Shown: piece by piece, positions 1,365 to 22,237 of the stretch
Layout of the letters: each line of letters opens with the position of its first letter
Position numbering within the stretch: the first letter of the stretch is position 1
Source: Ranitomeya imitator
Taxonomy: Eukaryota
Reading direction: 5' to 3'
Length of the DNA: 64,000 nt
NCBI RefSeq assembly: GCF_032444005.1
Contig: NC_091283.1
Coordinates: 61,132,001 to 61,196,000, forward strand
Position numbers and translations under genes: made by a program
Notes under the pieces: generated by a model
Databases searched by the model: none
Seen by the model: only the letters and a program-made list of their open reading frames with translations
What the model was told of the DNA's origin: nothing

Positions 1365-2128
1365 TCAAGGTACGCTCAGTTTCTCGATTCCATGAGTTCG
1401 AAGGTGGAAGTTTAGGTACGACCACTTTGTAAAGCATTTTTTACACTCGGGACACGTGAAGAGCTTATCTGCGGAGTGTGTCCTTTGGTGTGTCACCATG
1501 TGCGAACTCTGGGTGAAGCGTTTACCGCACTTGGGACAAGCGAACGGCTTCTCCCCCGTGTGCGTTCTGTAATGTGTGGCCATATTTGATCTCCGACTAA
1601 ATCTCTTCCCGCAGTCAGGGCAGGCGTACGGCTTTTCTCCCGTATGAGTCTTAAGATGCATTCCCAAGTGAGATCTTTTGGCAAATCGCTTGTCGCAGTG
1701 GCTGCAAGCATACGGCTTATCTACTAAAGACGAGTGGCCGTGTGTCATCTGGTGGATGAGAAGGTTGTTCATAGTCTCAAACAACTGACTTGGCTCCTCA
1801 CAAACACGTCCAGGATTATGGTCGCCGTACGCCGGTTCTTCATCGTACATGTAGTTATATTCGTTGGTTTCTTCTTTAATATGCGGATGTTCTACTGGTG
1901 TGAAATTGGCGTCGCCAGCATATCTACTGTAGGCCGTCCATGCCTGCTCTTCACATTGCTCCGATGTAGACATGTATGCCAGGCTGTCCATAGCATGCCT
2001 CGGGGATGCAATCGGAAAATTCTCTCCGCTGTCCTCTATCTGAGAGCCGTGAAACGAAGTTGCGTGATGTTTTGCTATGTTACTAGATGATGAAGACAAC
2101 GTGAAGGAGTCTTCTTGCAGATCTTCCT
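1365..2128 (-). CDS. terminal coding exon: four C2H2 zinc fingers
   Basis: Four C-x2-C...H-x3-H fingers with TGEKP linkers in ORF 1365..2171. Acceptor gtctttacag at 2129-2130, phase 1 compatible with exon 5. Summed exons give 1671 nt = 556 aa + stop. Confidence 0.9.
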
Positions 2129-3421
2129 CTGTAAAGACCACAAGACAGAATATAAAAATAATGCTTAACATGACTTTATTCTAACCCTTCTAGGACACAG
2201 ATGTTTAGAGTCCTAGAAGGGTCCAAGAGTCATAGTTATTTAATTTTTTAGTTAACCCCTTTACAACAGCAGCTCAAGGTCTCCTAAAAATGCAAAATTG
2301 CACCTGCTTTAGAGGTTTAAATGGGCCCCCTCAACTCTTGGGCCCCTGTGCCGCTGCACAGGTTGCACCAATGATATGTCCTCCCATGCTCACGCGACAA
2401 TATTGATGGAAAAATAAAAAACAGTTATTGCTCTGGGAAGAAGGGGAGCAAAAATTAAAGATGGCCTGGGGATGAAGGGGTTAACGTAGACGTAGTGTTT
2501 TTGTTTTTTTCCCCAAGAATGTTGGATTTTTAGTAGTACAATTTTTGGGTTCGGATTTGGCAGCTATGGGTTCCATTGTTAGGCCCCCAGGTGCCATGAC
2601 AACTTCAGAACCCCTGCAATTTGATAACAGTACGGCCAAAGGGCTGACAGAGGTAACTCCCTTCCTCTGTTTAGCCAACAGAAATTGCTGTATCTAGGGG
2701 ATTAAACTTCTGGGATGTAAGTAATACCCTCCCAATCTGCATGATGGATGTGGCCATAATGGTAATTGGGCCAGATGTGTCCACACTGTGGACTTATACT
2801 GGAGCCGGCTACACATTGCATGCATTGTGCACTGGCTGTAACATGGCTGTGTGTGGTTGGTGATGTACATAGACAGCACATGGTCTGATTATACACTAGC
2901 GTTTCATAAGAACATATACATATATGGATGGTAAATGATGCTGGAGAGCCATTTTCAGGGAATGATCACATTTTTCACAGCGTATCGTGGTAGCAACACT
3001 GCTGAGGACATACTGCATAAAAAGTCTGCAAAAGAAATTGACTTCAAGGGAACCTGTCACCCCAAAAATCGAAGATGAGCTGCGGCCACAGGCATCAGGG
3101 GTTTATCTACAGCATTCTGTAATGCTGTAGATAAGCACCCAATGTATCCTAAAAGATGAGAAAATGGTAATTAGACCTACCGGTAATTGTGTTTCCAGGA
3201 ATCCATCCTGACAGCACCACGGAGGTCGTCCTCCTTATCCATAGTGGGACAGGAAACCACGAGAGTACAAAAGGACCCTCTCCCCCTACCACCCATCAGT
3301 GATTTTCCAAAGTACCACATCTGGAGGGATGCAAAAAGGAATAGTTTATTTAAATAACAAAACAAGATACAAATGTTACATCACAGTTTTTAATGATTTA
3401 GTATAGGGAGGGAAACTAATA

Positions 3422-3514
3422 GTGCTGTCAGGATGGATTCCTGGAAATACAATTACCGGTAGGTCTAATTACCGTTTTCCAGGTCATCCTCCTGACAGGC
3501 CATGGAGAAGTACC
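3422..3514 (-). other. DIRS internal complementary region (ICR)
   Basis: 3422-3473 is the reverse complement of the element terminus 3166-3217 (52 nt, 1 mismatch). 3475-3514 is an ITR-like sequence predicting the other terminus. Confidence 0.85.
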
Positions 3515-3532
3515 AAAGGAGACTGGTTCTAA

Positions 3533-3728
3533 GGCCGGAGTCACACTACAGAGAGATACGGCCGAGTCTCGCTAGTTAAAACCAAGCTCTGGCACCGGCA
3601 CTCCGGAGCGGAGCGTGCGGCCGCACAGCAATACATGGAGCTGCACGCTCCGCTCCGGAGTGCCGGTGCCAGAGCTTGGTTTTAACCAGCGAGACTCGGC
3701 CGTATCTCGCTGTAGTGCGACTCCGGCC
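3533..3728. mobile_element. Harbinger-like MITE inside the DIRS 3' end
   Basis: Near-perfect hairpin with ggccggagtc(a/g)cacta TIRs and taa/tta flanks. Confidence 0.75.
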
Positions 3729-4760
3729 TTACGGTGGGACTACTGCTTGGAGTAACTTGCTGCCAAACCCTAGTTGTGTCGACATTACATCTAGTTTATA
3801 ATGTTTAGAAAAGGTACTGAGATTAGACCAGGACGCGGCTTTGCAAATTTGATCTGCTGAAGCCTCCCCCCCTCTCTGCTCATGAGGCTGACATTGACCT
3901 GGACGAATGTGCTTTGATACTGCCTGGGAGATTCTTTCCCTGAGCTTTATAGGCAGAAATAATTGTGGATCTAATCCACCTCGCGATAGTAGATTTAGAC
4001 GCCTTTCTACCTTTGTTTGGGCCTCTAAATTGAACAAAAAGATTATTATTTTGCCTCCAGGGTGCAGTTACTTCTAGGTATTTAAGGACCGTTTCTCTAA
4101 CGTCCAGGTTATGGTAGAGAGTTTCTTTTTGATTTTTAGGCGATTGGAAAAAAAGAGGGGAGTATGACCTCCTGATTCATATTGGAATTCGAGACCACTT
4201 TCGGGAGAAAGGCTGGATCAAGTTTCAAAACTAACCTGTCATTAAAGACCTGCAAATAAGGATCCTGGATAGAAAGAGCCTGGAGCTCACCCAGTCTTCG
4301 CCGAAGTGATGGCTACAAGGAAAGCAGTTTTTAGGGACAATTTACTAATAACTAGTTCGCTTCCTAAATCATACGGGTGTCTGCATAGTTCGTTAAGGAC
4401 TAAATTTAGGTCCCATGGTGGGACAGTTTTCCTTATCAATAGTTTTAACCTTGCAACTGCTCTGGAAAACCGACTTATCCAGGGGTGGGATGATAAGGTA
4501 GAGTCATAGAAGACACTAAGGGCCGCCACTTGTACCCTTAAGGTACTGGGTCTAAGACCTGCTCTAAAATCTGATTACAAGAAGTCAAGGATTTTGGGAA
4601 TATCAGGGTTGTCAGTATCAACTGTTGCCTCTCCGCAACAGCTGCAGAATTTTTTCAAAATTTTAGTATAGATGGAAGAAGCTACTGGCTTCCTACTTGA
4701 TTGTAGTGTGGAAATAACTTCATCCGACAAGCCCTTTGCTTTCAGGACCTGGCGTTCAGG
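3729..4760 (-). pseudogene. DIRS tyrosine recombinase
   Basis: SAM-like N-terminus (GLSDEVISTL...ILDFL), PPWDLNLVL, LKTAFLVAITSA and ICKAASWSNLSTFSKHY. Frameshifted. Confidence 0.85.
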
Positions 4761-6590
4761 ATCCAGGCTGATAACCAAAGAATTTCTGGATTCTGGGGAA
4801 AAATAGGTCCCTGATAGAGAAGGTCTCTTCTTCGGGGAAGAAAAACGGGTTTCTCCTTTGACATTTTCTTTAGTAAGGGGAACCAACTTCTCCTCGGCCA
4901 GAACAGTACTACAAGTACTTGGTATTAATGAAAGAGGAAGGAATGCGTATAACAGGCCTCTGCTCCATGACTGGGAAAAGGCATCGATCCCGTCCGGGTT
5001 CTCTTGAGGGTTCAGTGAGTAAAAGGTGCTGACCTTTACATTCTGTCTGGCTGCAAAGAGGTCTATGTCTGGATTTCCCCAACGATGGCATAAGTCTCTG
5101 AATACTTTGTTGTTTAGTTCCCATTCCGTCGATAAGACTGTCTTCTTGCTTAGGAAGTCCGCCACCTGGTTTCTGGTACCTTCTAGATGTACCGCCGAGA
5201 TTGAGAGTACTCTTTTCTCTGCCCATCTGAAGATTCGCTCTGCCAGCTGCTGCAAAGCCAAGTGTCTCAGACCCCCTTGATGACGAAGAAAGGCTACTGC
5301 TGTTGTGTTGTCCGATAGTACTTTCACATGTTTGTTTCTTACACAGGACTGGGCGGAGGACAGAACTTTCCAGACTGCGAGCAGCTCTGTAATTCGAGGA
5401 TTCCCTGCTGTCTTTCAGGCTCCACTGACCCTGGTAATACCTTTCCTGGATATGTCCTCCCCAGCCTTGCTGACTTGCGTCCGTGGTGATTATGACTTCG
5501 GGAGAATGAATCCAAGCAACTCCCTTTTGCAGGTTCTTGGGATTTGTCCACCAGTGTAAGGATGTCTTTACTCGAGGTGACAGATGTATTACCTTGTCCA
5601 ATGACCCCCGTCTTCGGTCCCAGGATGCGAGGATCGCTTGCTGAAGTTGTTGAGAGTGAAACGGACTCCAAGTTACGCAGGCAGTCATCCGCCCCAGGAC
5701 CTTCATGGCTTCCCTGATGGATACTCTGTTTTTTTGTGAACTGACGAACTATGTTTACTATGCCGCACAATTTCCCTCCTGGTAAAAAGGACATTTTTAC
5801 ACTTGAGTCTAGTATGACTCCGAGAAATTTTATTCTCTGTTTGGGTACTAGATCGGATTTTGAGCAATTTACGATCCACCCCAAATTCTGCAGTGTGGAG
5901 ATCTAAGACTGACAGTTGGTCCTGAGCTCATTTACCGTATCCGCTATTACTAGAAAGTCGTCCAGGTAAGGGACAACAATGATGTCCTGATTTCTTAGGT
6001 AGGCCACTACCTCTATCATAATTTTTGTAAAAATCCTTAGGGCTGAGGCTAGGCCAAACGGTAGGCAGCAAAACTGATAGTGGAAGATCCTGCCTTCCTT
6101 CTCTTCTGCAAACCTGAGGTATTTTTGGTGGCCTGGGTACATTGGGACATGATAGTACACACTCTTTAAATCTAGAGTACACATTACCACTCCTTTCCCT
6201 AAGAGGGGAATCGTGGATCTTATAGATTCCATTTTGAACCGCTTGTATTTTACCCATGTGTTTAGATGTTTGAGGTTTATGATTGTTCTTGATTCTACGG
6301 AGGGCTTTATTATGGAAAAAAGACTTGAATAAAAACCCTGTCCTATTTCCTAGGGAGGCACCGGAACGATTGCAGCTGTCTTTAGGAGGTCCTGAATGTC
6401 TACCCACCTGGGAGAGGTTGAGACGAGGTGGGAGCTGGATATTAGACATTTTTGTGGGGTGACGAGGAGAACTCTATTTTGTATCCCTGGGAGATCAGTG
6501 GCAGGACCCACGGGCTTGTGGTAATCTCCTGCCAACCCCCCAGGAACCTGGTTAGGTGCCCCCCTACTCTGGTGGCATCATTTCCTGTGG
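4760..6590 (-). pseudogene. DIRS reverse transcriptase / RNase H / methyltransferase-like
   Basis: VGGHLTRFLGGW, LDLKSVYYHVP, LPFGLASA, YLDDFLV, ITTDASQQGWGG, SDNTTAVA, DIDLFA and LYAFLP spread over ORFs 6442..6648, 5903..6232, 5339..5884, 4909..5706 and 4575..5327. Confidence 0.88.
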
Positions 6591-7830
6591 TATCCCGAAG
6601 TTGAACCTGAAAAGGTGGACTCTTTACCTTTGGTTCTAGTATCCCCACCTTTTGGATAGCTCCACCTCCCTTGTTTCCCTTTCCCCCTATAGTCAGTTCT
6701 CTGGGTAAAACGGGGCCTACGAAAGGGCTGACATTTTTTTGCGTTTCTCTTCCGGAAACCCCTTTTTATCATCTGAGGCCTTCTCTAAAATGTCGTCAAG
6801 AACTGGCCCAAATACTCTTCCACCTGAAAATGGGATATCACAAAGCTTATTTTTGGAATGCATATCCCTTGACCAGTTTTTGAGCCAGATGGCTCTTCTA
6901 GCTGCATTTGACAAGGATTGACTCCTGGCCGTGAACCTCACCGATTCTGCAGAGGCGTCTGCAAGAAAATCGGTTGCCATTTTTAGAAGGGGTAGGGATT
7001 TCAATATAGTCTCTCTAGGGGTTTTGGATGATAGTTGATCTACCAAATCATCTACCCATAAGTGCACAGATCGCGCCATTGATGTTGCCGCTATATTTGC
7101 ACATATCACAGCCGCCGAACTCTCCCAGGCTCTTTTTAAGAGACTGTCTGCCTTCCTATCCATAGGCTCCTTTAGGTTAGAGAAGTCTTCAAAGGGAATG
7201 GTGGCTCTCTTGGAGACTCTGGCTAAAGGAATGTCTATTTTGAGAATGTCCTCCCAGTCTTTGACCTCCTCTGAATCAAAAGGAAGACGAAGTTTCAAGT
7301 CTTTGGGAATAGTCAGACGTTTCTCTGCCTCCTCCCATTCTTCCAGAATCATAGATCGAATATGAGGGTTCACAGGGAAAACTTTTGAGGTTTGAGTACG
7401 TAACCCGCCAAACATTTCATCCTGTTGAGCAAGATGTTGGAGGTTCCTCAATCTGCATGGTGCATCTCACTGCACCTAGTAGCTCGTCCGAGTCCACAGA
7501 ACAGGATAAATACCTCTTCCCTCTTTCTGGAGGATCTCTATACTCATCCTCCTCCAGATCAGACTCGGACAAAGCCCCCTCAAAAGAGGAGACCGAATCG
7601 CTCATCCTTTTCCTGGATAGGCTTTCAGGCTGCGTGGTTTGAGGAACAACAAGGCCAGAAACCGACGCCTGCACCTCCTCTCTGATAATAGCCCTCATAT
7701 TTGACATATAGAGGCTTGTTCTTTCCCCACAATGCGATTAGTGCATGTCTCACAAAGGAGTTTTTGCCATGAATCCTTCAGCCTTATGGTGCAAATAGGA
7801 CACTTCCTATATTCCCCGATTTTTTAAATT
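6578..7830 (-). pseudogene. DIRS ORF1 (gag-like, LAP2alpha-type C-terminal domain)
   Basis: ORFs 7417..7707 and 6717..7451 (EEW...PFD...DIPLARV...KEPMDRKAD...AARRAIWLKNW...PFSGGRVFG). N-terminal CPIC..LCETC relic at ~7745-7810. Frameshifted. Confidence 0.8.
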
Positions 7831-10702
7831 TTTGTCCGAAGAAGTAGAGGTGCCCTATAAAACAGAAGTAACCCTGTTTTGGGAAGCTGCACACTGGTGG
7901 GTGGTGGGGATTAAGTGATAACCCATTTCCATGGTACTCACATGCACCTGGCTCTCCGTCTCCAACCTAGCGATATCCTCCATATTGTACGGAATGCTCC
8001 CTGCTCAGCGGAGACGTCGCACCCTAAACCCCTTTATCTTATATCCACAGCGTCATCCGTTGGAGCGCCTCAGCCACGCTCACAGACTTGCCCCGGAAAC
8101 AGCTCCAGTGAGGACGAGATGCCGCCCTGCCCACCGCAACCCGGAAGTGACTACGCCCGGTTGTAGTGTGCGGTGTCTCAGCAATGGCCACTGGTACACT
8201 TCACTCCGGGGCCACATGATGACACCTTCAACCCTCAGAGGTGGCCCCAGACCAGGGAATACTCCGGGCGGCGTGCATGGTCGAGAGCCCTTTTCAGGAG
8301 GATGCGACCGGATATCCCAGGAGCAGCGCTGCACTGGGTAAGCTGAGGGACCCTGTGTCGGGTTTCAGCATACGGCGGTCTTGGTCGAGGTAGGAAGGGT
8401 AACAAGGGCCAAGACCTCCCAATCCACACCCTCCGAACGGAGCATGTCGGCGTTACTCTCGTTGTTCCTATCCACAGTGGGACAGGAAAATCACTTATGG
8501 GTGGTAGGGGGAGGGTCCTTTTGTACGCTCGTGGTTTCCTGTGCTGAAGATCCACAGTCCTGTGCCCCCCGGAGACTGGCTGCCTGGTCCTACAGACCGG
8601 GAGATGCAGGGTTAATCTACAGCAGAAAATGGCTGCTGAGAAGGAGAGGAAGGAGAAGGGGGCGGAGAGCTGGAAAAAGGCGGCAAGGCTGTGTAAAAAC
8701 GCGCCCTTTCTGTCTCGATCCACCCCCTTTATGACACTATAGAGTGTCATATTTGTCATCCGGGGGGCGGAGAGGAGGCGGCGGCTTCAGCTAGGCCGAA
8801 GCCGGGGCCTAAATTAGATGCCTGAGGCCCAGAAGGGCTCCAGGCCAGAGCGAAAGTCCGGGAGGGGGTCGGATCTGAACCGGACCCCCCCAGATTTAAA
8901 GGCAGGATGGCGGTGGGGCTAGAAGCGGAAGGGGGGCCCTGTGAGGGGTCCCCCTAAGGCAGTATAGAGCTGGTGCTGCCGCAGATACAGGGCTCAGGGA
9001 GCCCTGTGTCTGTATGTGCCATGCCTGCCTGCACTCCCCCCGGCCCCAACAGGAGCCCGCAGCTGGGCTGGGGTCCCTGCATGCAGGCGCAGTGTGCTGG
9101 CCCATTGCTGGGAGCTGCAGAATGCTGCCTGTACAGGCCCTACCTGAGGCGTCTCAACCTAATGCCCCCAGAGGGGGAATAGGGAGGGTGCTGCTGTCAC
9201 CATCAGGGGGTTTTGTCCTCACCTCGACCTCAACCCAGAAACCAAAAGGAATTGGGGAAGGAGGGGGGTCTCGACTTCGAACCAGCACCCGAGGGACTGG
9301 AGAAGGAGTGACATGGGGAATAGCTATCTCTACTTCAACTGGGCACCCCGTAATAGGGGGCCGAGGAAGGAGCCATGCCGGGAGTCTCACAGGAGACCCT
9401 CTTTTCTTCATCTGTAATCCCGTCGGAAAAAACGGAGTAAAAAAAATCTTTAAGTGTGCCTCCTATGCGACACTAAGCAAAAACTGGAGAAGGCTGACGC
9501 CGTCCAGGGGTGTATACTGCAGAGGAGGAGCCACGGTTAATCTTTTTCAGATTATGCATAGTGTCGCCTCCTAGTGGACAGCAGCATAACACCCATGGTC
9601 CTGTGTCCCCCAATGAGGCGACAGAGTAAGAGGTTAGATTATACTCACCCAGGGGCGGTCCCGTCCGATGGGCGTCGCGGTCCAGCCCGGGGCCTCCCAT
9701 CTTCTTACGATGACGTCCTCTTCTTGTATTCACGCTGCGGCTCCGGCGTACTTTGTCTGCCCTGTAAGCACTGCAGTGCGCAGGTGCTGGGCCTCTCTGA
9801 CCTTTACCGGCGCCTGCGAAGTGCAGTACTTTTCTCTGCCCTCAACAGGACACACAAAGTACGCCTGTGCCGGAGCGTGAATGCAAGAAGAGGACGTCAT
9901 CGTAAGAAGATAGGAGGCCCCGAACCGGACCACGACACCCATCGGACTGGACCGCAGCAGGACCGCCCCTGGGTGAGTATAATCTAACCTCTTTTTCTCA
10001 TCTTTTAGGATACATCGGCTGCTTATCTACAGCATTACAGAATGCTGTGGATAGACCCCTGATGCCGGTGGCCGCAGCTCATCTTCGATTTTTGGGGTGA
10101 CAGGTTCCCTTTAAGGTGCGTATTATCAGTCCTCAGAATGTGAATTTATGCAGTGCCCGGGCAAAGTACAATGAGTATCTACGGAGTTTACACAATACTC
10201 TTAATGGTTTACCTGTGCAGGAGGCTTCATGGACAACGGAGGTTTCCCAGGCATTTAACACATATGTCTCCTCTGTTGCTTGATCAACCGGTAACGAGTC
10301 TGTGCTGAACTCACCTATATAAACCAACAAACCAGAGAATGAGCCAACAGGACCTAGAAATGCTCGCTTACAAGACACAGGCTGAGCCCTGTCCACACAC
10401 CGCTGCTGTTTGGCCACTACTGTAAATCTCTGACAGTGGATTTAAAGTGGGTCAATTTAATCATGTTAACATTTTGGTACCCTTCCCCCCCCCACCACCT
10501 TTCTGTTTTCAGACCAAAAAGAAGAAATAAAAATATATATATTTTTTTTTTATTAACCATTATGGCAAATGCTTTAAAGATAACAAAAAAAAGCCAGAAT
10601 TGCCATTTTTGGTCACTTCAACTCTCTCCCCAAAAATAATAAAACATAAGGCAATGAAAACATGGTATGTACACCAAAATGTCAAAGATTACAGCTCACT
10701 AC

Positions 10703-10958
10703 TAGTGATGAGCGAATGTGCTCGGATAAGGTGTTATCTGAGCATGCTACGGTGCTAAGAGTGTCTTCTGCGTCCTCGAAAAATATATTCGAGTCCCCAC
10801 GGCTGCATGTCTTGCGGCTGTAAGGCAATCCCTGCATGTGTTGTGGAACAGCCGCGAGACATGCATTCAAACACAGTATTCGAGCACGCTGATGACACAC
10901 TGTTAGCACCCGAGCATGCTCAGATAACACCTTATCCAAGCACATTCGCTCATCACTA
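10703..10958. mobile_element. hAT-type MITE (tagtgatgagcg family)
   Basis: TIRs tagtgatgagcg/cgctcatcacta and exact 8-bp TSD ctcactac. Other copies at ~960-1152, 22962-23233, 29605-29887, 54379-54669, 57825-58066 and 62595-62884. Confidence 0.85.
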
Positions 10959-11624
10959 CTCACTACGCAAAAAACAAGCTGCACCAAGATCAATCAACAG
11001 AAGAAGGAAAAAAGTTGCAGATCTCCGAAAACTGCAATGATTATTCACCATGGCACTTATGTTGCATCTCAAGGTGTTCCATCTTTCTTTGGTTTCTTGT
11101 TATATTCCCATATTTTCATGACTTTTGATTTCTTATTAACTTGAGATGCAACGATGCATGTGCTCTGGTTAATTGTGATTGTTATTACTCGGAAGGATTC
11201 TTTACCTAAGAGCACTGAAACACCCCGCCCAGGGTACCGACCGAAAATCTTGGAAGGTTATTGGCTCACAAAATGGCATCACAAATTAATCACATTTTTT
11301 CTTTTTTTTATAAAGTTCTGGGTTTTTAATTAGCCACTAACATAGAATAAAAAAATATATATACAAGTTTGGCATCAACATTTCCCCACAATTGGAATTT
11401 TTTGTCCTGTTTTTCAGAATACTATATGGTGCGTGAATGAATGGTGTCATTCAAAACTGCAACAAGAAATGCAGAAAAAAAAGAAACCCCAATATGGCTA
11501 TGTTGCCGAAAAAAAAAAAAAAAAAAAAAGAGAGAGCAAAAATGAAAAATTGCATGGCCAGGTAGGGATAGGCCAGTGTAAGATTATAGGTAACTGGCAA
11601 GTACATACAGCAATAATCACTCAC

Positions 11625-11738
11625 CTGCGTAGACATCTGTTGAGACATCCACCTGTTCGATTTCAGCTCTGCTTTCACTGTCGTCTTCTTCTTCTTCCTC
11701 AGTGACCACCACAGCCTTTACATCTTCAGTGCAAATCT
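11625..11738 (-). CDS. coding exon 5: acidic linker (EICTEDVKAVVVTEEEEDDSESRAEIEQVDVSTDVYA)
   Basis: Acceptor ttttatcaacag, donor CAG|GTGAGT, 114 nt, phase 1->1, open. Confidence 0.82.
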
Positions 11739-11779
11739 CTGTTGATAAAAAAAATATATATCTGATCAATTATACCAAA

Positions 11780-11972: not shown

Positions 11973-12111
11973 CTGGTTCTTCTGGCGGAGGAGTACTGGA
12001 TCTCTGATGGTTCTCCATCACCACCTTCTGGTACAGGTCTCTGTGCTCTTCTATATAGTCCCACTCCTCCATAGTAAAATAGACGGAGACATCACCACAT
12101 TTTATAGGAAC
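11973..12111 (-). CDS. coding exon 4: KRAB-A-like domain ([34 protein letters not shown])
   Basis: DVSVYF.MEEW..L...DLY..V.MEN KRAB-A pattern. Acceptor ccatttcag, donor CAG|GTAAGG, 139 nt, phase 0->1. Confidence 0.9.
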
Positions 12112-12567: not shown

Positions 12568-13381
12568 GGTTGTGAATTCTGTGGCCAAGCTCCCTCCTGT
12601 GGTCATGAGTGGTACTTCGGCTGGTTCTGTCTATGAGCTTCCTCTGGTGGATGTGAGTGGGCTGCGGCTTCTGAGTTTCCTTCCTCAGGTGACGAGGTTA
12701 AGTCGTTAGGTGCTGCTCTATTTAACTCCACCTAGTTCTTTGTTCCTGGCCTCCAGTCAATGTTCCAGTATTGGTCTTGCTTTCTCCTGGATCGTTCTTG
12801 TCGCCTGTCTGCCCTGCATAAGCTAAGTTTTGCTTGTGTTACTTTTGTTTGCTATATTTTCTGTCCAGCTTGCTATATTGGTTTTTCTTGCTTGCTGGAA
12901 GCTCTGAGACGCAGAGGGAGCACCTCCGTACCATTAGTCGGTGCGGAGGGTCTTTTTGCCCCCTCTGCATGGTTGTTTGTAGGTTTTTGTGCTGACCGCA
13001 AAGCTATCTTTCCTATCCTCGGTCTATTCAGTAAGTCGGGCCTCACTTTGCTAAAATCTATTTCATCTCTGTGTTTGTATTTTCATCTTTACTCACAGTC
13101 ATATGTGGGGGGCTGCCTTTTCCTTTGGGGAATTTCTCTGAGGCAAAGTAGGCTTATTTTTCTATTTTCAGGGCTAGCTAGTTTCTCAGGCTGTGCCCGA
13201 GGCGCCTAGGTCTGGTCAGGAGCGCTCCACGGCTACCTCTAGTGTGGTATGATAGGTTTAGGGATTGCGGTCAGCAGAGTTCCCACGTCTCAGAGCTCGT
13301 CCTATGTTAGTAACTATCAGGTCACTTTGTGTGCTCTTAACCACTAGGTCCATTGTGGTTCTGAATCACCTGTTCATAACA
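12568..13381 (+). repeat. 5' LTR (814 bp)
   Basis: Starts (g)gttgtgaattc and ends ataaca. TATA-like tatttaa at 12719-12725. Confidence 0.95.
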
Positions 13382-13383
13382 GT

Positions 13384-13394
13384 ACTGGAGGCCA
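13384..13394 (+). other. self-priming primer-binding site
   Basis: actggaggcca is the exact reverse complement of tggcctccagt (12747-12757), which lies 28 nt downstream of the LTR TATA-like box. Confidence 0.8.
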
Positions 13395-13516
13395 AAAGTA
13401 CTAATGCTTCTCAATAGAGGGAAAAGAGAAGTTCTGAGACCATTTTTTTTTCTCTGTACTGTGTTTTGTCTTTCTTTTCCCCTAGACATTTGGGTGGTTC
13501 AGGACACAGGTGTAGT

Positions 13517-15414
13517 GATGGACATTAAAGATCTGTCTTCTTGTGTGGATCATCTCACTGCAAGAGTACAAAATATTCAAGACTTTGTGGTTCAGAATTC
13601 TATGTTAGAACCAAGAATTCCTATTCCTGATTTGTTTTCTGGAGATAGAGCTAAGTTTCTGAGCTTTAAGAATAATTGTAAACTGTTTCTGGCTTTGAAA
13701 CCCCGCTCCTCTGGTGACCCAGTTCAACAAGTTAAGATCATTATTTCTTTATTACGTGGCGACCCTCAAGACTGGGCATTTTCCCTTGCGCCAGAGAGAT
13801 CCTGCATTATGTAATATTGATGCGTTTTTTCTGGCGCTCGGATTGCTGTATGATGAACCTAATTCAGTGGATCAGGCAGAGAAAAATTTGCTGGCTCTGT
13901 GTCAGGGTCAGGAGGAGGTAGAGATATATTGTCAGAAGTTTAGGAAGTGGTCTGTGCTCACTCAATGGAATGAATGTGCGCTGGCAGCAATTTTCAGAAA
14001 AGGTCTCTCTGAAGCCCTTAAGGATGTCATGGTGGGATTTCCTATGCCTGCTGGTCTGAATGAGTCTATGTCTTTGGCCATTCAGATCGGTCGACGCTTG
14101 TTTGAGCGTAAAACTGTGCACCATTTGGCGGTATTATCTGAGCATGGACCTGAGCCTATGCAGTGCGATAGGACTTTGACCAGAGCTGAACGGCAAGAAC
14201 ACAGACGTCAGAATGGGCTGTGTTTTTACTGTGGTGATTCCACTCATGCTATCTCCGATTGTCCTAAGCGCACTAAGCGGTTCGCTAGGTCTGCCACCAT
14301 TGGTACGGTACAGTCGAAATTTCTTTTGTCCGTTACTTTGATCTGCTCTTTGTCATCCTATACTGTCATGGCATTTGTGGATTCAGGCGCTGCCCTGAAT
14401 TTGATGGACTTGGAGTTTGCTAGGCGCTGTGGGTTTTTCTTGGAGCCCTTGCAGTATCCTATTCCATTGAGAGGAATTGATGCTACGCCTTTGGCCAAGA
14501 ATAAGCCTCAGTACTGGACCCAGCTGACCATGTGCATGGCTCCTGCGCATCAGGAGGATATTCGCTTTTTGGTGTTGCATAATCTGCATGATGTGGTCGT
14601 GTTGGGGTTGCCATGGCTACAAGTCCATAACCCAATATTGGATTGGAAATCAATGTCTGTGTCCAGCTGGGGTTGTCAGGGGGTACATGGTGATGTTCCA
14701 TTTCTGTCTATTTCATCATCCACCCCTTCTGAGGTCCCAGAGTTCTTGTCGGATTACCGGGATGTATTTGATGAGCCCAAGTCCAGTGCCCTACCTCCGC
14801 ATAGGGATTGTGATTGTGCTATCGATTTGATTCCTGGTAGTAAGTTTCCTAAAGGTCGACTGTTTAATTTGTCTGTGCCTGAGCACGCCGCTATGCGGAG
14901 TTACGTAAAGGAATCCTTGGAGAAGGGTCATATTCGCCCGTCATCGTCGCCATTGGGAGCAGGGTTCTTTTTTGTGGCCAAGAAGGATGGTTCGCTGAGA
15001 CCTTGTATTGATTACCGCCTTCTAAATAAAATCACGGTCAAATTTCAGTACCCCTTGCCGCTGCTGTCTGATTTGTTTGCTCGGATTAAGGGGGCTAGTT
15101 GGTTCACCAAGATAGATCTTCGTGGTGCGTATAATCTTGTGCGTATTAAACGGGGCGATGAATGGAAAACAGCATTTAATACGCCCGAGGGCCATTTTGA
15201 GTACCTGGTTATGCCATTCGGGCTTTCCAATGCTCCATCAGTATTTCAGTCCTTTATGCATGACATCTTTCGAGAGTACCTGGATAAATTCCTGATTGTA
15301 TACTTGGATGATATTTTGGTCTTCTCGGATGATTGGGAGTCTCACGTGAAGCAGGTCAGAATGGTGTTCCAGGTCCTGCGTGCTAATTCTTTGTTTGTGA
15401 AGGGGTCAAAGTGA
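13517..15414 (+). pseudogene. Gypsy gag-protease-RT
   Basis: MDIKDLS...EPRIPIPDLFSGDR (capsid), CFYCGDSTHAISDC, AFVDSGA, LRPCIDYRLLN and YLDDILV. One frameshift, premature TGA. Confidence 0.92.
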
Positions 15415-15418
15415 CTCT

Positions 15419-17752
15419 TTGGTGTTCAGAAGGTTTCATTTTTGGGTTTCATTTTTTTTTTCCCCTTCTACTATCGAGATGGACCCTGTTAAAGTTCAGG
15501 CCATTTATGATTGGACTCAGCCGACATCTCTGAAGAGTCTGCAAAAGTTCCTGGGCTTTGCTAATTTTTATCGTCGCTTCATCAATAATTTTTCTAGTAT
15601 TGCTAAACCGTTGACTGATTTAACCAAGAAGGGTGCTGATGTGGTCAATTGGTCTTCTGCTGCTGTGGAAGCTTTTCAAGAGTTGAAGCGTCGTTTTTCT
15701 TCTGCCCCTGTGTTGTGCCAACCAGATGTTTCGCTCCCGTTCCAGGTCGAGGTTGATGCTTCTGAGATTGGAGCAAGGGCTGTTTTGTCGCAAAGAAGTT
15801 CTGATGGCTTGGTGATGAAACCATGCGCCTTCTTTTCCAGGAAGTTTTCGCCTGCTGAGCGTAATTATGATGTTGGCAATCGAGAGTTGCTGGCCATGAA
15901 GTGGGCATTCGAGGAGTGGCGTCATTGGCTTGAAGGAGCTAAGCATCGCGTGGTGGTCTTGACTGATCACAAGAACTTGACTTATCTCGAGTCTGCCAAA
16001 CGGTTGAATCCTAGACAGGCTCGTTGGTCGCTGTTTTTCTCCCGTTTTGACTTTGTGGTTTCGTACCTTCCGGGCTCTAAAAATGTGAAGGCGGATGCCC
16101 TGTCTAGGAGTTTTGTGCCCGACTCTCCGGGTTTGTCTGAGCCGGCGGGTATGCTCAAAGAGGGAGTAATTGTGTCTGCCATCTCCCCTGATTTGCGGCG
16201 GGTGCTCCAAAAATTTCAGGCTAATAGACCTGACCGTTGCCCAGCGGAGAAACTGTTTGTCCCTGATAAATGGACGAGTAGAGTTATCTCTGAGGTTCAT
16301 TGTTCGGTGTTGGCTGGTCATCCTGGAATCTTTGGTACCAGAGATTTGATGGCTAGATCCTTTTGGTGGCCGTCTCTGTCGCAGGATGTGCGTTCGTTTG
16401 TGCAGTCCTGTGGGATTTGTGCTCGGGCTAAGCCCTGCTGTTCTCGTGCCAGTGGGTTGCTTTTGCCCTTGCCAGCCCCGAAGAGGCCATGGACACATAT
16501 CTCTATGGATTTTATTTCGGATCTCCCCGTCTCTCAAAAAATGTTGGTCATTTGGGTTGTTTGTGATCGCTTCTCTAAGATGGTCCATTTGGTACCCTTG
16601 TCTAAATTGCCTTCCTCCTCTGATTTGGTGCCATTGTTCTTCCAGCATGTGGTTCGTTTACATGGCATTCCAGAGAATATCGTTTCTGACAGAGGTTCCC
16701 AGTTTGTTTCGAGGTTTTGGCGAGCTTTTTGTGCTAGGATGGGCATTGATTTGTCTTTTTCCTCGGCTTTCCATCCTGAGACAAATGGCCAGACTGAACG
16801 AACCAATCAGACCTTGGAAACATATCTGAGATGTTTTGTTTCTGCCGATCAGGATGATTGGGTGTCCTTTTTACCTTTGGCTGAGTTCGACCTTAATAAT
16901 CGGGCCAGCTCGGCTACTTTGGTTTTGCCGTTTTTCTGCAATTCTGGTTTCCATCCTCGTTTCTCTTCAGGGCAGGTTGAGTCTTCAGACTGTCCTGGTG
17001 TGGATACTGTGGTGGATAGGTTGCAGCAGATTTGGACTCATGTGGTGGACAATTTGACATTGTCCCAGGAGAAGGCTCAACGTTTCGCTAACCGCAGGCG
17101 CTGTGTGGGTCCCCGACTTCGTGTTGGGGATTTGGTTTGGTTGTCATCTCGTTATATTCCTATGAAAGTTTCCTCTCCTAAGTTTAAGCCTTGTTTCATT
17201 GGTCCGTATAGGATTTCTGAGGTTCTTAATCCTGTGTCTTTTCGTTTGACCCTTCCAGATTCTTTTTCCATACATAACGTATTCCATAGGTCATTGTTGC
17301 GGAGATACGTGGCACCTATGGTTCCATCCGTTGATCCTCCTGCCCCGGTTTTGGTTGAGGGGGAGTTGGAGTATATAGTGGAGAAGATTTTGGATTCTCG
17401 TATTTCGAGACGGAAACTCCAGTACCTGGTTAAGTGGAAGGGTTATGGTCAGGAAGATAATTCCTGGGTCTTTGCCTCTGATGTTCATGCTGCCGATCTG
17501 GTTCGTGCCTTTCATTTGGCTCATCCTGGTCGGCCTGGGGGCTCTGGTGAGGGTTTGGTGACCCCTCCTCAAGGGGGGGGTACTGTTGTGAATTCTGTGG
17601 TCAAGCTCCCTCCTGTGGTCATGAGTGGTACTTCGGCTGGTTCTGTCTATGAGCTTCCTCTGGTGGATGTGAGTGGGGCTGCGGCTTCTGAGTTTCCTTC
17701 CTCAGGTGACGAGGTTAAGTCGTTAGAGCAGCACCTATTTAACTCCACCTAG
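15419..17752 (+). pseudogene. Gypsy RT C-terminus, RNase H, integrase and chromodomain
   Basis: VEVDASEIG, NYDVGNRELLA, HCSVLAGHPG..CGIC, ISMDFI, IVSDRG and EYIVEKILDSR...YLVKWKGYGQEDNSW. Confidence 0.93.
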
Positions 17753-18401
17753 TTCTTTGATCCTGGCCTCCAGTCAATGTTCCAGTATTGGTCTTGCTTT
17801 CTCCTGGATCGTTCTTGTGGCCTGTCTGCCCTGCATAAGCTAAGTTTTGCTTGTGTTATTTTTGTTTGCTATATTTTCTGTCCAGCTTGCTATATTGGTT
17901 TTTCTTGCTTGCTGGAAGCTCTGAGACGCAGAGGGAGCACCTCCGTACCATTAGTCGGTGCGGAGGGTCTTTTTGCCCCCTCTGCGTGGTTGTTTGTAGG
18001 TTTTTGTGCTGACCGCAAAGCTATCTTTCCTATCCTCGGTCTATTCAGTAAGTCGGGCCTCACTTTGCTAAAATCTATTTCATCTCTGTGTTTGTATTTT
18101 CATCTTAACTCACAGTCATTATATGTGGGGGGCTGCCTTTTCCTTTGGGGAATTTCTCTGAGGCAAGGTAGGTTTATTTTTCTATCTTCAGGGCTAGCTA
18201 GTTTCTCAGGCTGTGCCCGAGGCGCCTAGGTCTGGTCAGGAGCGCTCCACGGCTACCTCTAGTGTGGTATGATAGGTTTAGGGATTGCGGTCAGCAGAGT
18301 TCCCACGTCTCAGAGCTCGTCCTATGTTAGTAACTATCAGGTCACTTTGTGTGCTCTTAACCACTAGGTCCATTGTGGTTCTGAATCACCTGTTCATAAC
18401 A
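17584..18401 (+). repeat. 3' LTR (818 bp)
   Basis: tgttgtg...ataaca, preceded by the PPT aagggggggg at 17571-17580. Confidence 0.95.
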
Positions 18402-18994
18402 GTCACCGCTCTGCTTTACGGCCGACGCTTACACAGTGCAGGGAAGCTGACGGCGAGGGACGCGACAGACACCGGAATGTAAGTATGTAGTGTTTGTCTG
18501 TTTTTTACATTTACAATGGTAACCAGGGTAAACATCGGGTTACTAAGCGCGGCCCTGCGCTTAGTAACCCGATGTTTCCCCTGGTTACCCGGGGACCTCG
18601 GCATCGTTGGTCGCTGGAGAGCTGTCTGTGTGACAGCTCTCCAGCGACCACACAACGACGCTGCAGCGATCGGCATCGTTGTCTATATCGCTGCAGCATC
18701 GCTTAATGTGACGGTACCTAAAGACTGCAGTGCCAACAGAATCGGCTCATCTGGGTGCTAGTATTGAAGGGATCATTCTTGACATTCCCTACACATGTAG
18801 CTTCAAATTCCAATCTCACAGATCACATATTCCGCACACAAGTCACATTGGGCATCATGTAGCATTAACAACCATGGACTCAAATCGTCAAAATCCCCCA
18901 TTCTGCCAACTTTTCTCTGGATAACAAACACTTTCCCACTTGTGTGTTTAAGAGAAATAAATATTAATAAATAAAGATTGTTGGTAGCACTCAC

Positions 18995-19051
18995 CTCATC
19001 ATTTTTGGGGCTGCTGGGTGGAGAACAATTCTTTTTTACCATCATGTACTC
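18995..19051 (-). CDS. coding exon 3 (EYMMVKKNCSPPSSPKNDE)
   Basis: Acceptor ctcctgtag, donor GAG|GTGAGT, phase 0->0. Homologous to EYVVMKKNSP in gene 2. Confidence 0.82.
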
Positions 19052-19519
19052 CTACAGGAGAAGAAGTGGAGATGGTTTAATAGAATAGAATAGATTTGCA
19101 TCACATTCGTAAAATACGGTACTGTGGAAGCACACAGCAACATTCTTCGGAAGCGCAAAGCAGCAGCAACGTTCTTCGGAAGCGCGCAGCAGCAGAGTTA
19201 TTCGGAAGCGCACAGCAGCAGCATTATTCATTAACACGCAGCAGTGGTTTCTTTCTCATTTTATGGTATGCCACATGGAGTGTCTGCAGCAAGAAGAGAC
19301 ACCACGTTCCGCCAAACAGTGCATGAGTGCAATGGCGTGTTCATGGACCCTTATTTAGTCAAAACTAATTAATGATGTTCTGTATTTTTACGTAGTTTGT
19401 GTGTGTGCCAGACGATTTGAAATGCAGCACACACCTCTGGATTTTATGGTATTTTATTATAGTAGTGCATTTATAGCAGGGGTCTATAGGAGTAGATTAC
19501 ACCAGTCTCCAGCACTCAC

Positions 19520-19605
19520 CTCTCCAGTCAGCAAGGAGATTATTTCCATTGCTAGCTTCAAAAGTCTTTTGTTCATTATCTTCTCTTTCTTGTTTTCAAC
19601 AAAAT
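19520..19605 (-). CDS. coding exon 2: FAX-like box (DFVENKKEKIMNKRLLKLAMEIISLLTGE)
   Basis: Acceptor ctctctag, donor GAG|GTGAGT, phase 1->0. The xxIIxLLTGE motif matches the first coding exon of gene 2 and amphibian finger-associated boxes. Confidence 0.85.
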
Positions 19606-19683
19606 CTAGAGAGATAATAAAACATAATCGTAACCAGTTCTTGGTCAACTATTAGGACCAGCGTGCACGCGCCTCCTCCTTAC

Positions 19684-20194
19684 CACAGTGCGGATCTGTG
19701 CCAATTGACTTGTCCACCATCGGTTTGACAGTCAGTGTCAAATCATGTTTCACATTCCCAGATTCGGCCATTTCTGGGTTCCCCTGGGAGGTCGGTCCCA
19801 TCTGAGGGACAAAGGCTTGTGGAAGGGAAGAGCTCGAATGTGGAAGGTTTTCTATTTGTGCTTTTGTGCAGGACGGAGCCTTGGAGACCTCCTGCACATC
19901 CGAGAGGTTTGGCACATCTTGAAAAACCGTCGGGACGGCGTCTGGTTTCAGAACCATTTTTGAGCCGTTGAAGAAGTAACTTTTCGGTGAGAAATGTTTG
20001 GAACAGATTTGATAAAGCCCAGTCCTGTTAGACTGCAGAACATTCTTCGCGAACGCTTCTAGGTCAACGAACGCGATACCCGTCTGCTGGAGCCAAAGTC
20101 TAATCATCTGGATGGAGCTTGGGAAGCCATGAAATGTGATACCGGCGTCACAGGCAGAATAGCTGTGGCAGGTCGTCACGATACACTTTGTCAT
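19684..20194 (-). CDS. THAP-FAX-KRAB-like-C2H2 gene, coding exon 1: THAP DNA-binding domain plus linker
   Basis: Open frame MTKCIVTTCH...RLWLQQ...ICSKHF...LKPDAVPTVF carries the C2CH THAP signature and AVPT motif. AG acceptor at 20206-20207 lies 11 nt before the ATG (context AACCATG). Donor TGTG|GTAAGG at 19683, phase 1. Confidence 0.88.
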
Positions 20195-22237
20195 GGTTGT
20201 TTTCCCTGGACAGAAGAGAGGTCATAATTATAAAGGAAAGCTTTACGGCATCATATACATATGGCCGGTCTCACACGCTCAGGGTTCCGGCCTGCGCTCG
20301 GACCACTATGTCTCCTACTGCCTCATATGTACCTGTAAAAGTCAATAATCTCAGGTCATGGGACGCGGCGGCCATGTGGTTTTTCCGATTTGCGCAAAGA
20401 CACGTGAAACTGGCCTAAGGAAGATCAAAGAACTGAAGGGTTTGTCCAATTTCATTTTAAAAAAAAAGTGTGGCAAGGCAGCCATAAAATAAACCAAAGA
20501 CCACTTACTTTTGAAAACCCATGTCAGAAAGGCTGTATAATCCTTTTTAGAAGTTTTTCGGCTTGATATTGCAATAGGCTTGTCTCTCAAAATGCTCACC
20601 TTAATATAAGAATTATACAACTAGTCTGACATGGATTTTCAAAGTAAGTATACCAGTCTCATTAGGTCTAAGATTTATTTACTACTGTGTACATTTTGGA
20701 TTTTCAAATCTGGTGACAGATCCACTTTAAAGAAACCGAACGACCTCTTAAAAGACGCAATAGTCACATTTTGCCTAGCAGCTGCTATACTTTCATGGGA
20801 TTTAAGAGGTGAGATTATTAAAACTGGTCAGAGAAATCAGTATTTTACAAAAGGTCAAAACTGCCTATTAAAGTAACAGCAGCAGGAGCGTAATACAATT
20901 GTTTTTCAAGGTGGAGCAGTCTTACATCACCAAGCACGATGCAAAGTGTTGGCAGTAGTGGTGTAAAGCAGTCACCACTGGACTCTAGAGGGGTCATGTT
21001 CCCACATGGCAGAGCTCTATGTTGGGTGTGCACCCAAGGCCAGATTCAGGCATGGGTGTGTTTTTGTGTCTGTATTATAGCAGAGATGGGTCACCATTAC
21101 AGAGGACCAGCCAAGGATTCGAGAAGCGCCAGAATGAGATCAGCAGAGGAATAATGAGGTGAAAATCTCAGGTATTTTAGGATTTATGACATGTTTTGTA
21201 CCACTTGTGTCCAGCCTCTGTGGGGCACGGACTATTCTGTCCTTCTGACATAACCTTATGTGTCTTTTTCTCAACTCCTCTTCGCTGATTTATGACCAGC
21301 AACCATATCAAAAGGTGAGCAGAACTTTGGTGCAGTCACAAATCAGCATAGAGAGGACAGACGGTGGTATAAATCGGGCAGCAATGCGCGGAGTGATCGG
21401 CAGCTGTCCCCTCCATGAAGCGGACATGCTCGGGTTCAGGAGAGCCGCCAGCCTGTCCACGTGCTGCAGTCCGATTTATATCTGACTGCGCCTTTTAAAG
21501 GAGTTTTCCAGTTTTGGAAAACTCTGTCCCTCGGCTGCAGCTTGTTTAAAATAAAAAGTCTTGGTGTCTTATTGCTCGCAGACCTGACGGACAACGCTGC
21601 AGCCGATTATCGAGCTCCGTGGGCCTGCCCCAGCTGAGGCACGAGCCACTGATTAGCAGCAGCGTTGTCGATGTGACGTCAGGGCTGCAGGCAATTACAG
21701 ACGCAGGGAGCATCAGCAGAGACTCTGGACTGGACCTGGGTAGGGTGAGAAAAGCACAGTTTTCTAGTCTAAACCAAGCTGCAGCCAGGAGACAAGAGAT
21801 TTGCCAAAACCAGATAACACCTTCACCTCATTTTGCAGCCAGCAACGTATAGTGGGGGAAAAAGTATAATTCATACGTCGCCAAAATGTCTGTGACTGGG
21901 TGTCACCATATAAACAGCCATATTTTTTGGGTCAGGGGCTTCATAGTATACTTCCTGTGTAGCCTGACCCTCAAAGGGAGCTATAGAACGCACACTATGG
22001 TGCTGGGCACCAGCAAGAGCCCAATGCACTAGTCCTGGGGCGTCCATGCAGCACACACAGCCCCCTGCTTACAGGCACAGTGCAGACAAGTTCTCTGTAT
22101 ATCGCCCGTAACTCCTGGTGCTCTCACTCCACAGAGTGCGGCACACACACAGCTGCTGTGCTGTTCTCGTCGCACTTTACTGCCATTTGCAGCATTTTCA
22201 CAAAGTGACAACATTTCCCCAAGAGTTAATCCCTTAC

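What the first reader, a model, noticed from the sequence alone, without database searches (positions are those of the whole stretch)
1365..20205. THAP domain spliced in frame onto a FAX/KRAB-like/C2H2 gene: a two-DNA-binding-module candidate repressor
Seen: six exons with canonical GT-AG sites and matching phases (1,0,0,1,1) join into one stop-free 556-aa frame: THAP, FAX-like box, KRAB-A-like, acidic linker, 4 C2H2. The THAP exon is linked by a 78-nt intron. The paralogue at 51-57 kb has the same downstream architecture but an in-frame stop before its FAX exon, so it has no THAP. Known: THAP is the P-element transposase DNA-binding fold, and KRAB-ZFPs recruit TRIM28 to silence TEs. I know of no characterised protein combining THAP, KRAB and C2H2. 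Inference: a transposase-derived DNA-binding domain was captured by a KRAB-ZNF, possibly to target DNA-transposon TIRs or MITEs (abundant here) in addition to finger-specified sites.
Basis: partly seen in the sequence, partly recalled or inferred. Interest (0 to 1): 0.82.

Follow-up and report, generated by a model that had tools for sequence, protein, structure and literature searches.

The report
Frog THAP–KRAB–zinc-finger fusion gene
This is a real, expressed frog gene in which a transposase-derived THAP DNA-binding domain is spliced onto a KRAB-like zinc-finger protein, but this type of fusion was catalogued in frogs and reptiles in 2021 and the gene is already annotated in many frog genomes, so it is a sound but not a new discovery.

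Summary
The exon structure is real. All GT-AG sites and phases check out. RNA contigs from four runs of the window's own species carry the 78-nt THAP-to-FAX splice, the next junction and a 5'UTR exon.

Pfam confirms THAP, a KRAB-A box and four C2H2 fingers. Full-length orthologues exist in 13 other neobatrachian frogs, mostly named 'zinc finger protein 436-like'. The window is about 99.8% identical to a Ranitomeya imitator protein.

The gene is constrained:
- THAP dN/dS is 0.27 (bootstrap 0.13-0.57).
- Finger-array dN/dS is 0.013.
- The DNA-contact residues of all four fingers are identical in 14 species.

The novelty claim fails. Cosby et al. (2020 preprint) list five THAP + KRAB + ZF_C2H2(x4) host-transposase fusions, including the Anura-wide KKOLOD1. 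This gene is probably that one or a close relative.

The most likely function is a sequence-specific regulator with a fixed target, probably a repressor. Deep conservation argues against the proposed transposon-chasing role. Repression and TRIM28 binding are untested.

The parts
22237..22280 (-). 5'UTR exon (its 5' end is not defined; contigs reach 22280), spliced to the acceptor at 20204
   Evidence: Joint 20204/22237 (2032 nt skipped, GT..AG) in runs X1, X3 and X19. Donor GTAAGG follows 22237, and a CCAAT-like box lies about 50-90 nt upstream.
20332..20416 (-). Alternative 5'UTR exon
   Evidence: Joint 20204/20332 (127 nt skipped) in run X2 only.
19684..20204 (-). THAP exon: 10 nt of leader, ATG at 20194, then 170 codons plus 1 nt. 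THAP domain is residues 4-91; a linker ends in the motif MVDKSIGTDP.
   Evidence: Pfam THAP 49.7 bits. C4, C9, C64, H67, F24-P25 and W34 are invariant in 14 species. dN/dS is 0.27. Sequence matches to solved THAP1, THAP2 and THAP11 structures.
19606..19683 (-). 78-nt intron. Read through in frame it gives GKEEARARWS then a stop, resembling the continuation of the pipid relatives' exon (GKEDKGTLW).
   Evidence: Spliced out in contigs of all four runs. tblastn of the pipid proteins P0010 and P0176 runs through the donor to 19658.
19520..19605 (-). FAX-like N-terminal box exon. It contains the former start codon (MNKRLL...LLTGE).
   Evidence: The homologous box starts the paralogue's ORF at 57526 and is shared with XlCOF/XlCGF-like frog zinc-finger proteins.
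18995..19051 (-). Small coding exon (EYMMVKKN...)
   Evidence: Joint 19050/19519 in four runs; colinear with mRNA L001.
11973..12111 (-). KRAB-A-like exon
   Evidence: Pfam KRAB 33 bits. Aligns to the ZNF93 KRAB of the entry 7Z36, with DV and EEW kept and VME in place of MLE. dN/dS is 0.075. The loose end at 18993 reads into it.
11625..11738 (-). Acidic linker exon
10213..10314 (-).
   Evidence: tblastn and blastn with the orthologue. Splice sites read. RNA word share 0.35, matching exon-only content.
1365..2128 (-). Last coding exon: spacer plus four C2H2 fingers, stop codon at 1367-1365. The 3'UTR continues to at least about 1269.
   Evidence: Pfam zf-C2H2. Finger-array dN/dS is 0.013. Contact residues KSHM/RSNT/QSHT/KSYF are identical in 14 species. 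mRNA homology runs to 1269.
51213..57526 (-). THAP-less paralogue (FAX box, KRAB-A-like, acidic exons, four fingers), showing the presumed ancestral layout

Best explanation
This is a conserved host-transposase fusion gene of neobatrachian frogs. One mRNA (a 5'UTR exon plus seven coding exons, 590 aa) encodes four modules in order: an N-terminal THAP zinc-coordinating DNA-binding domain of the Kolobok/P-element type, the frog 'FAX-like' N-terminal box, a KRAB-A-like box, and four C2H2 fingers.

Shown: the exon structure; the splicing in this species; the domain content; the orthologues in 13 other species; purifying selection on every module; complete fixation of the finger contact residues.

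Inferred origin: a THAP exon sits upstream of a FAX/KRAB-like zinc-finger gene whose start codon lay in the FAX exon. A 5' splice site formed by the ancestral codons GGT-AAG joins it in frame, leaving a 78-nt intron that still resembles the old coding continuation.

Inferred function (about 50%): a sequence-specific transcriptional regulator, most likely a repressor. THAP and the finger array would read a fixed, possibly composite, DNA target, and the KRAB-A-like box would recruit a co-repressor, as demonstrated for other KRAB-transposase fusions.

It belongs to the published class of THAP-KRAB-C2H2 fusions and is probably (about 60%) the neobatrachian form of Cosby et al.'s Anura-wide KKOLOD1.
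For: Splice sites and frame. Pfam THAP, KRAB and C2H2 all above the curated cut-offs.

RNA contigs from four runs in four studies carry the 78-nt splice, the next splice and the 5'UTR splice, at 95-100% identity to the window. The cassette exon is present in RNA. mRNA contig L001 (2313 nt, 594-aa ORF) from another frog is colinear with all seven coding exons.

Full-length orthologues occur in Hyla, Dendropsophus, Bufo, Leptodactylus, Rhinoderma, Phyllobates, Anomaloglossus, Mixophyes, Pseudophryne, Hyperolius, Rana and Mantella. They form one clade (SH-aLRT 99) whose branching is compatible with the species tree, with a supported hyloid subclade.

dN/dS against L001: THAP 0.27 (bootstrap 0.13-0.57, 0 of 500 replicates at or above 1), KRAB exon 0.075, fingers 0.013. 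The THAP C2CH, FP and W residues are invariant; 84% of finger-array positions are invariant; contact residues are identical in 14 species.

In Mantella the former start methionine in the FAX exon is replaced by Leu, and the residues upstream of it are conserved as coding. The fusion is therefore the main product.

The class is documented in Cosby et al. Table S3. KRAB-transposase fusions repress reporters through their cognate sites.

The motif M[VIA]DK..[GN]T[DE] at the end of the THAP exon occurs in 24 of 173 THAP proteins examined. All 24 are neobatrachian orthologues or pipid THAP-KRAB-like-ZNF proteins.
Against: No functional data exist for any THAP-KRAB-C2H2 protein; the four fusions tested by Cosby et al. 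were mariner/Tigger types.

The KRAB box is only KRAB-A-like. It has a one-residue deletion and VME instead of MLE. KRAB-A alone of ZNF10 failed to co-precipitate TRIM28, and Xenopus XFIN KRAB-AB bound it weakly (PMC3912051).

Identity with KKOLOD1 could not be checked because NCBI gene numbers cannot be resolved with these tools. No Nanorana orthologue turned up. The pipid relatives have five different fingers and no FAX box, and the tree does not resolve the pipid-neobatrachian relationship (support 84).

Contigs drop rare variants, so a minor THAP-less or intron-retaining isoform is not excluded.
Confidence: 0.85

Rival explanations
1. Transposon-silencing reading. The captured THAP domain still recognises the terminal repeats of Kolobok/P-type DNA transposons or their MITE derivatives, so the protein silences those elements in addition to sites specified by the fingers.
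For: Young KRAB-transposase fusions bind and repress through the TIRs of their cognate transposons (Cosby et al.). The nearest non-zinc-finger relatives of this THAP domain are 740-820-aa THAP-only frog proteins, the size reported for Xenopus Kolobok transposases (PMC6004289).
Against: The fusion is at least as old as crown Neobatrachia, far older than any active transposon family is likely to persist. The THAP domain is under purifying selection, and the finger contact residues are frozen in 14 species. Both point to a fixed target. No binding data exist.
Confidence: 0.15
2. Two separate products. The THAP ORF (180 aa if the 78-nt intron is retained, ending at the TAA at 19654-19652) is translated on its own, and the zinc-finger protein starts at the methionine inside the FAX exon, as in the paralogue.
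For: The read-through ORF exists. The former start codon is still present in the window.
Against: All contigs in four runs have the intron removed. The orthologue mRNA is spliced the same way. The methionine is replaced by Leu in Mantella, and the residues before it are conserved as protein. Thirteen independent annotations model the fusion.
Confidence: 0.04
3. A conserved DNA-binding factor that is not a TRIM28-dependent repressor. The KRAB-A-like and FAX boxes would mediate other interactions, for example activation, an architectural role or oligomerisation.
For: The KRAB box departs from the canonical one and no KRAB-B box is evident. Some KRAB-transposase fusions act partly independently of KAP1. 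KRAB-A alone binds TRIM28 poorly. The FAX box is as conserved as the KRAB box (42% versus 33% invariant positions), and its partner is unknown.
Against: DV, EEW and the glutamate of the MLE motif are retained. The KRAB exon is strongly constrained (dN/dS 0.075).
Confidence: 0.3

Closest known systems
[quoted passage not shown]
   Same: A THAP domain of P/Kolobok type is joined by splicing to KRAB and four C2H2 fingers. Only the fusion transcript is seen. The THAP domain is under purifying selection (their 0.108, here 0.27). The taxon is Anura, including a ranoid. A linker motif at the end of the THAP exon is shared with the pipid THAP-KRAB-like-ZNF proteins.
   Different: Identity with a listed gene number could not be verified. 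This gene carries the FAX-like box between THAP and KRAB. The pipid relatives seen here lack that box and have five unrelated fingers.
KRABINER and the other tested KRAB-transposase fusions (KMARD1, KTIGD1, KTIGD3)
   Same: A KRAB module is combined by splicing with a transposase DNA-binding domain. These fusions are shown to act as sequence-specific repressors.
   Different: In those genes a mariner/Tigger transposase replaces the finger array at the C-terminus, and the genes are young. Here THAP is N-terminal, the finger array is kept (giving two DNA-binding modules), and the gene is ancient.
Frog FAX/KRAB-like zinc-finger genes (XlCOF/XlCGF-like), including the paralogue at 51.2-57.5 kb
   Same: Same exon layout from the FAX box onward, a similar KRAB-A-like exon (69% identity) and a short finger array.
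   Different: They start at the methionine of the FAX exon and have no THAP exon.
Human THAP proteins (THAP1, THAP2, THAP11) and Kolobok transposases of Xenopus
   Same: C2CH THAP fold signature with the P, W, F and AVPT[IV]F motifs.
   Different: The human THAP proteins have no KRAB box or C2H2 array. The transposases carry DDE and H2CH domains that are absent here.

Membership tests
THAP domain (PF05485) | C2CH zinc signature (C-X2-4-C-X35-53-C-X2-H) plus conserved P, W, F and the C-terminal AVPTIF box | tested here: met
   Pfam 49.7 bits over profile positions 1-87/87. C4, C9, C64, H67, F24-P25, W34 and F68 are invariant in 14 species; AVPTVF lies at residues 86-91.
Host-transposase fusion gene (Cosby et al.) | The transposase-derived domain is encoded by its own exon and joined to host-domain exons by splicing, with transcript support | tested here: met
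   The THAP exon is separate. The joint 19684/19605 is present in four RNA runs and in the orthologue mRNA.
Host-transposase fusion gene (Cosby et al.) | Purifying selection on the transposase-derived domain | tested here: met
   dN/dS 0.27, bootstrap 0.13-0.57. This rests on one species pair only, because orthologue DNA was not retrievable.
Host-transposase fusion gene (Cosby et al.) | Demonstrable similarity of the captured domain to a transposase family (Repbase) | tested here: inconclusive
   The nearest non-zinc-finger relatives are 740-820-aa THAP-only frog proteins of Kolobok-transposase size. No Repbase comparison was possible.
KKOLOD1 orthologous group | THAP + KRAB + four C2H2 fingers, present in Xenopus and in a neobatrachian (Nanorana) | tested here: inconclusive
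   The architecture is met. A linker motif is shared exclusively with the pipid THAP-ZNF proteins, but the tree is unresolved, no Nanorana orthologue was found and the gene numbers are not resolvable.
Canonical (modern) KRAB zinc-finger repressor | KRAB-A box with DV, EEW and the MLE motif | tested here: inconclusive
   Pfam KRAB 33 bits against a cut-off of 20.4. DV and EEW are present. MLE is VME, and there is a one-residue deletion relative to the ZNF93 KRAB.
Canonical (modern) KRAB zinc-finger repressor | KRAB-B box supporting stable TRIM28 binding | not tested
   The Pfam model covers KRAB-A only. The residues after it (HQRSSTPPPEEP) run into the exon end and an acidic exon, and no KRAB-B profile was available.
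Canonical (modern) KRAB zinc-finger repressor | Binds TRIM28 and represses when tethered | not testable with these tools
   Needs a reporter assay and co-immunoprecipitation.
Xenopus FAX (finger-associated box) zinc-finger proteins | N-terminal conserved box preceding the fingers, as defined in the 1989-1993 Xenopus literature (recalled from memory) | tested here: inconclusive
   The box is shared at 57-64% identity with proteins named XlCOF7.1-like, XlCOF8.4-like and XlCGF53.1-like and with the paralogue. There is no Pfam model, and no paper on the FAX domain is in the searchable library.

The most novel reading that the evidence does not exclude
The neobatrachian gene is not simply KKOLOD1 but a remodelled descendant. 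An Anura-wide THAP exon was re-spliced onto a FAX-type zinc-finger gene through a cryptic donor inside its own former coding sequence. That produced a dual-DNA-binding factor whose finger specificity has been frozen since the neobatrachian ancestor, which would imply an essential, still unknown regulatory target rather than transposon defence.
Probability: 0.3. Interest if true: 0.45.

Novelty: already known. Interest (0 to 1): 0.3.

Why it matters
It gives a clean, transcript-supported example of transposase-domain capture in which the host finger array is kept, so one protein carries two unrelated DNA-binding modules. Because both modules and the KRAB-like box are strongly conserved across Neobatrachia, the gene is a reasonable candidate for functional work on how such fusions are wired into host regulation. 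It does not open a new category: the class was published in 2021 and the gene is in current annotations.

Tried and rejected
- A third homologue search using the C-terminal finger region of the Rana orthologue was swamped by generic poly-zinc-finger proteins and did not reveal a Nanorana orthologue.
- Genomic DNA of orthologues for a multi-species dN/dS could not be fetched: the sample file was too large or the protein was not on record. Selection therefore rests on one pair plus protein conservation.
- Synteny with ADPRM, which is fused to a pipid relative in one UniProt model (P0012), was sought in the window and not found.
- The full-length AlphaFold model (13-sequence alignment) had mean pLDDT 43 and pTM 0.18. 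It was too poor for a fold search, so none was run.
- Literature searches for the FAX domain returned nothing in the held library.
- The 'separate ORFs' and 'chance ORF' readings were rejected on the RNA and orthologue evidence.


Full report
**What is in the sequence**

The gene lies on the minus strand. Every acceptor is AG and every donor is GT. The phases are 1,0,0,1,1, and the joined frame has 556 codons with no stop.

Pfam scans of the separate exons give three domains above the curated cut-offs:
- THAP (PF05485): 49.7 bits against a cut-off of 23.9, covering the whole profile.
- KRAB (PF01352): 33 bits against 20.4, profile positions 3-36 of 42.
- zf-C2H2: four stretches.

The short FAX-like exon has no Pfam family.

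**Transcript evidence in the window's own species**

RNA runs hold about 0.39 of the words of window 18900-20300, which is roughly the exon fraction. I laid the contigs of four runs from four studies on window 18800-24700, with these results:
- The joint 19684/19605 (78 nt skipped, GT..AG on the minus strand) is present in all four runs.
- The joint 19520/19051 is present in all four runs.
- A loose end at 18993 reads into the first bases of exon 4 at 12111.
- An upstream 5'UTR exon (at least 22280-22237) is spliced to an acceptor at 20204 in three runs. An alternative 5' exon (20416-20332) is used in one run.
- One contig is 2099 nt long and carries the 5'UTR exon, the THAP exon, the FAX exon and exon 3, then continues beyond the stretch.

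In the spliced leader an in-frame TGA lies 24 nt before the ATG at 20194. The THAP methionine is therefore the first start codon. No contig retains the 78-nt intron or skips the THAP exon. Contigs cannot exclude rare forms.

**A missed exon**

The best hit in the 1.84-billion-protein library is P0001, 594 aa, 70% identical over the THAP exon. It is encoded on a 2313-nt assembled transcript (L001).

That mRNA maps colinearly to the window in seven coding blocks. The extra block, 10314-10213, is 102 nt with AG and GT sites and goes from phase 1 to phase 1. All orthologous proteins contain this segment. RNA runs of this species hold 0.35 of the words of window 10150-10380, against 72/201 = 0.36 expected if only the 102-nt exon is transcribed.

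The main product is therefore 590 aa.

**Conservation**

A word-indexed search with P0001 residues 1-260 found full-length proteins covering THAP through KRAB in these genera:
- Hyla, Dendropsophus, Bufo, Leptodactylus, Rhinoderma, Phyllobates and Anomaloglossus
- Mixophyes and Pseudophryne
- Hyperolius, Rana and Mantella

Most are named 'zinc finger protein 436-like' or 'uncharacterized protein'.

A tree of THAP domains puts the window and 13 orthologues in one clade (SH-aLRT 99). Within it a hyloid subclade has SH-aLRT 97. The Rana+Mantella and Mixophyes+Pseudophryne pairs are only weakly supported, and Hyperolius is unresolved. The window is next to Phyllobates. A Ranitomeya imitator protein, whose THAP exon is mis-modelled in that annotation, is 99.8% identical over 452 residues. 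The window is therefore from that species or a very close relative.

Locus tags suggest that a THAP-less FAX-type zinc-finger gene sits a few genes away in several species, as it does here at 51-57 kb. I did not check this by coordinates.

**Selection**

Against L001 the dN/dS values are:

| Region | dN/dS |
|---|---|
| THAP domain | 0.27 (bootstrap 0.13-0.57; 0 of 500 replicates at or above 1) |
| Whole THAP exon | 0.31 |
| FAX exon plus exon 3 | 0.13 |
| KRAB exon | 0.075 |
| Finger array | 0.013 |

In the 14-species alignment the THAP zinc ligands and the FP and W residues are invariant, and 84% of finger-array positions are invariant. The contact residues (-1, 2, 3, 6) of the four fingers are KSHM, RSNT, QSHT and KSYF in every species.

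The former start methionine in the FAX exon is shifted by one position in Rana and replaced by Leu in Mantella. The residues upstream of it are conserved as protein. These facts reject neutral evolution of the THAP exon, a repetitive-element artefact, and separate translation of the two parts.

**Origin**

The paralogue at 57526-51213 begins at the methionine of its FAX exon, with an in-frame TGA 9 nt upstream. It has the same KRAB-A-like exon and four fingers. It shows the layout expected before capture.

Pipid proteins with THAP, a KRAB-like box and five fingers share two things with this gene:
- the THAP domain, which is 65-68% identical to the THAP domain of the Rana orthologue;
- a linker motif, M[VIA]DK..[GN]T[DE], at the same distance from THAP.

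These pipid proteins come from Xenopus tropicalis, X. laevis and Hymenochirus. Among 173 THAP proteins examined, only the neobatrachian orthologues and this pipid group have the motif.

After the motif the pipid proteins continue G-K-E/A-D-K-G-x-L-W. The window's intron, read in frame, gives G-K-E-E-A-R-A-R-W, and tblastn extends through the donor. The donor G|GTAAGG is made of the codons for that Gly-Lys.

My inference is that an older, Anura-wide THAP exon became joined to a FAX-type gene through a splice site inside its own former coding sequence. This rests on a short similarity and is not proven.

**Comparison with what is known**

Cosby et al. describe at least 94 host-transposase fusions in tetrapods (bioRxiv 10.1101/2020.05.07.082677, later in Science). 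KRAB is the commonest host partner, with 32 events, and P/Kolobok supplies 21% of the transposase parts.

Their Table S3 lists these THAP + KRAB + ZF_C2H2(x4) fusions:
- KKOLOD1: Anura, 200-350 My, with a Xenopus tropicalis, an X. laevis and a Nanorana parkeri gene; fusion transcript only; dN/dS 0.108.
- KKOLOD2 and KKOLOD3: Xenopus.
- KTHAPD2: turtles.
- KTHAPD3: reptiles and birds.

I could not resolve the gene numbers, so identity with KKOLOD1 remains probable rather than shown.

None of the THAP entries was tested functionally. The four fusions shown to repress through their cognate TIRs were mariner/Tigger types.

Further THAP+C2H2 models, with or without FAX or KRAB-like boxes, are frequent among the nearest database relatives: 75 of 173 by motif. 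They are named from Anomaloglossus, Pyxicephalus, Mixophyes, Hyperolius, Pseudophryne, Discoglossus, Eleutherodactylus and others.

**Mechanism**

The most likely function is a sequence-specific transcriptional regulator that uses both DNA-binding modules on a fixed target.

Repression through the KRAB-A-like box is plausible. DV, EEW and the glutamate of the MLE motif are kept in the alignment to the ZNF93 KRAB of the entry 7Z36, and the exon is strongly constrained.

It is also uncertain, for three reasons:
- The box has a one-residue deletion and VME in place of MLE.
- No KRAB-B box is evident.
- Published work shows weak TRIM28 binding for a Xenopus KRAB-AB domain and none for KRAB-A alone of ZNF10 (PMC3912051).

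It fits poorly with the age of the gene and with frozen specificity residues.

**Verdict**

The structural interpretation is right. The novelty claim is not, and the transposon-targeting idea remains untested. Interest is modest.

Noticed in passing
window 12718-18403 (+), inside intron 3 of the gene: Apparently young Ty3/gypsy-type LTR retrotransposon, antisense to the gene. The two LTR segments (12718-13383 and 17735-18403) are 99% identical. The ORFs carry protease, RT, RNase H, integrase and chromodomain matches. It accounts for most of the 6.9-kb intron.
   Followed up: partly
window about 3700-7700 (-), inside the last intron: Degraded retroelement with an RT fragment (RVT_1, 46 bits) and an ORF matching the LAP2alpha family (57 bits). 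This combination has been seen in DIRS-like elements (from memory). It was not classified further.
   Followed up: no
window 20161: Codon 12 of the THAP domain differs between samples. The assembly and run X19 have TAT (Tyr). Runs X1-X3 have GAT (Asp) at full depth, as do most orthologues. This is probably a polymorphism at a non-conserved position.
   Followed up: partly
window 28308-29252 (-) and 42449-43399 (-): Two intact single-exon olfactory receptor genes (7tm_4, 162 and 152 bits) lie between the THAP gene and its paralogue.
   Followed up: partly
window 24185-25396; about 52250-53330; about 59550-61620: Three long tandem arrays: a GC-rich 21-nt repeat upstream of the gene, a repeat of roughly 60 nt inside an intron of the paralogue, and a 32-nt-period array seen as regularly spaced short blastn hits.
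   Followed up: no
Ranitomeya imitator protein P0174 (CAJ0965525.1): The public model of this gene in R. imitator splits the THAP exon with a spurious intron, losing residues about 51-138. It therefore carries no Pfam THAP hit. The Eleutherodactylus model P0170 also lacks the THAP part.
   Followed up: partly
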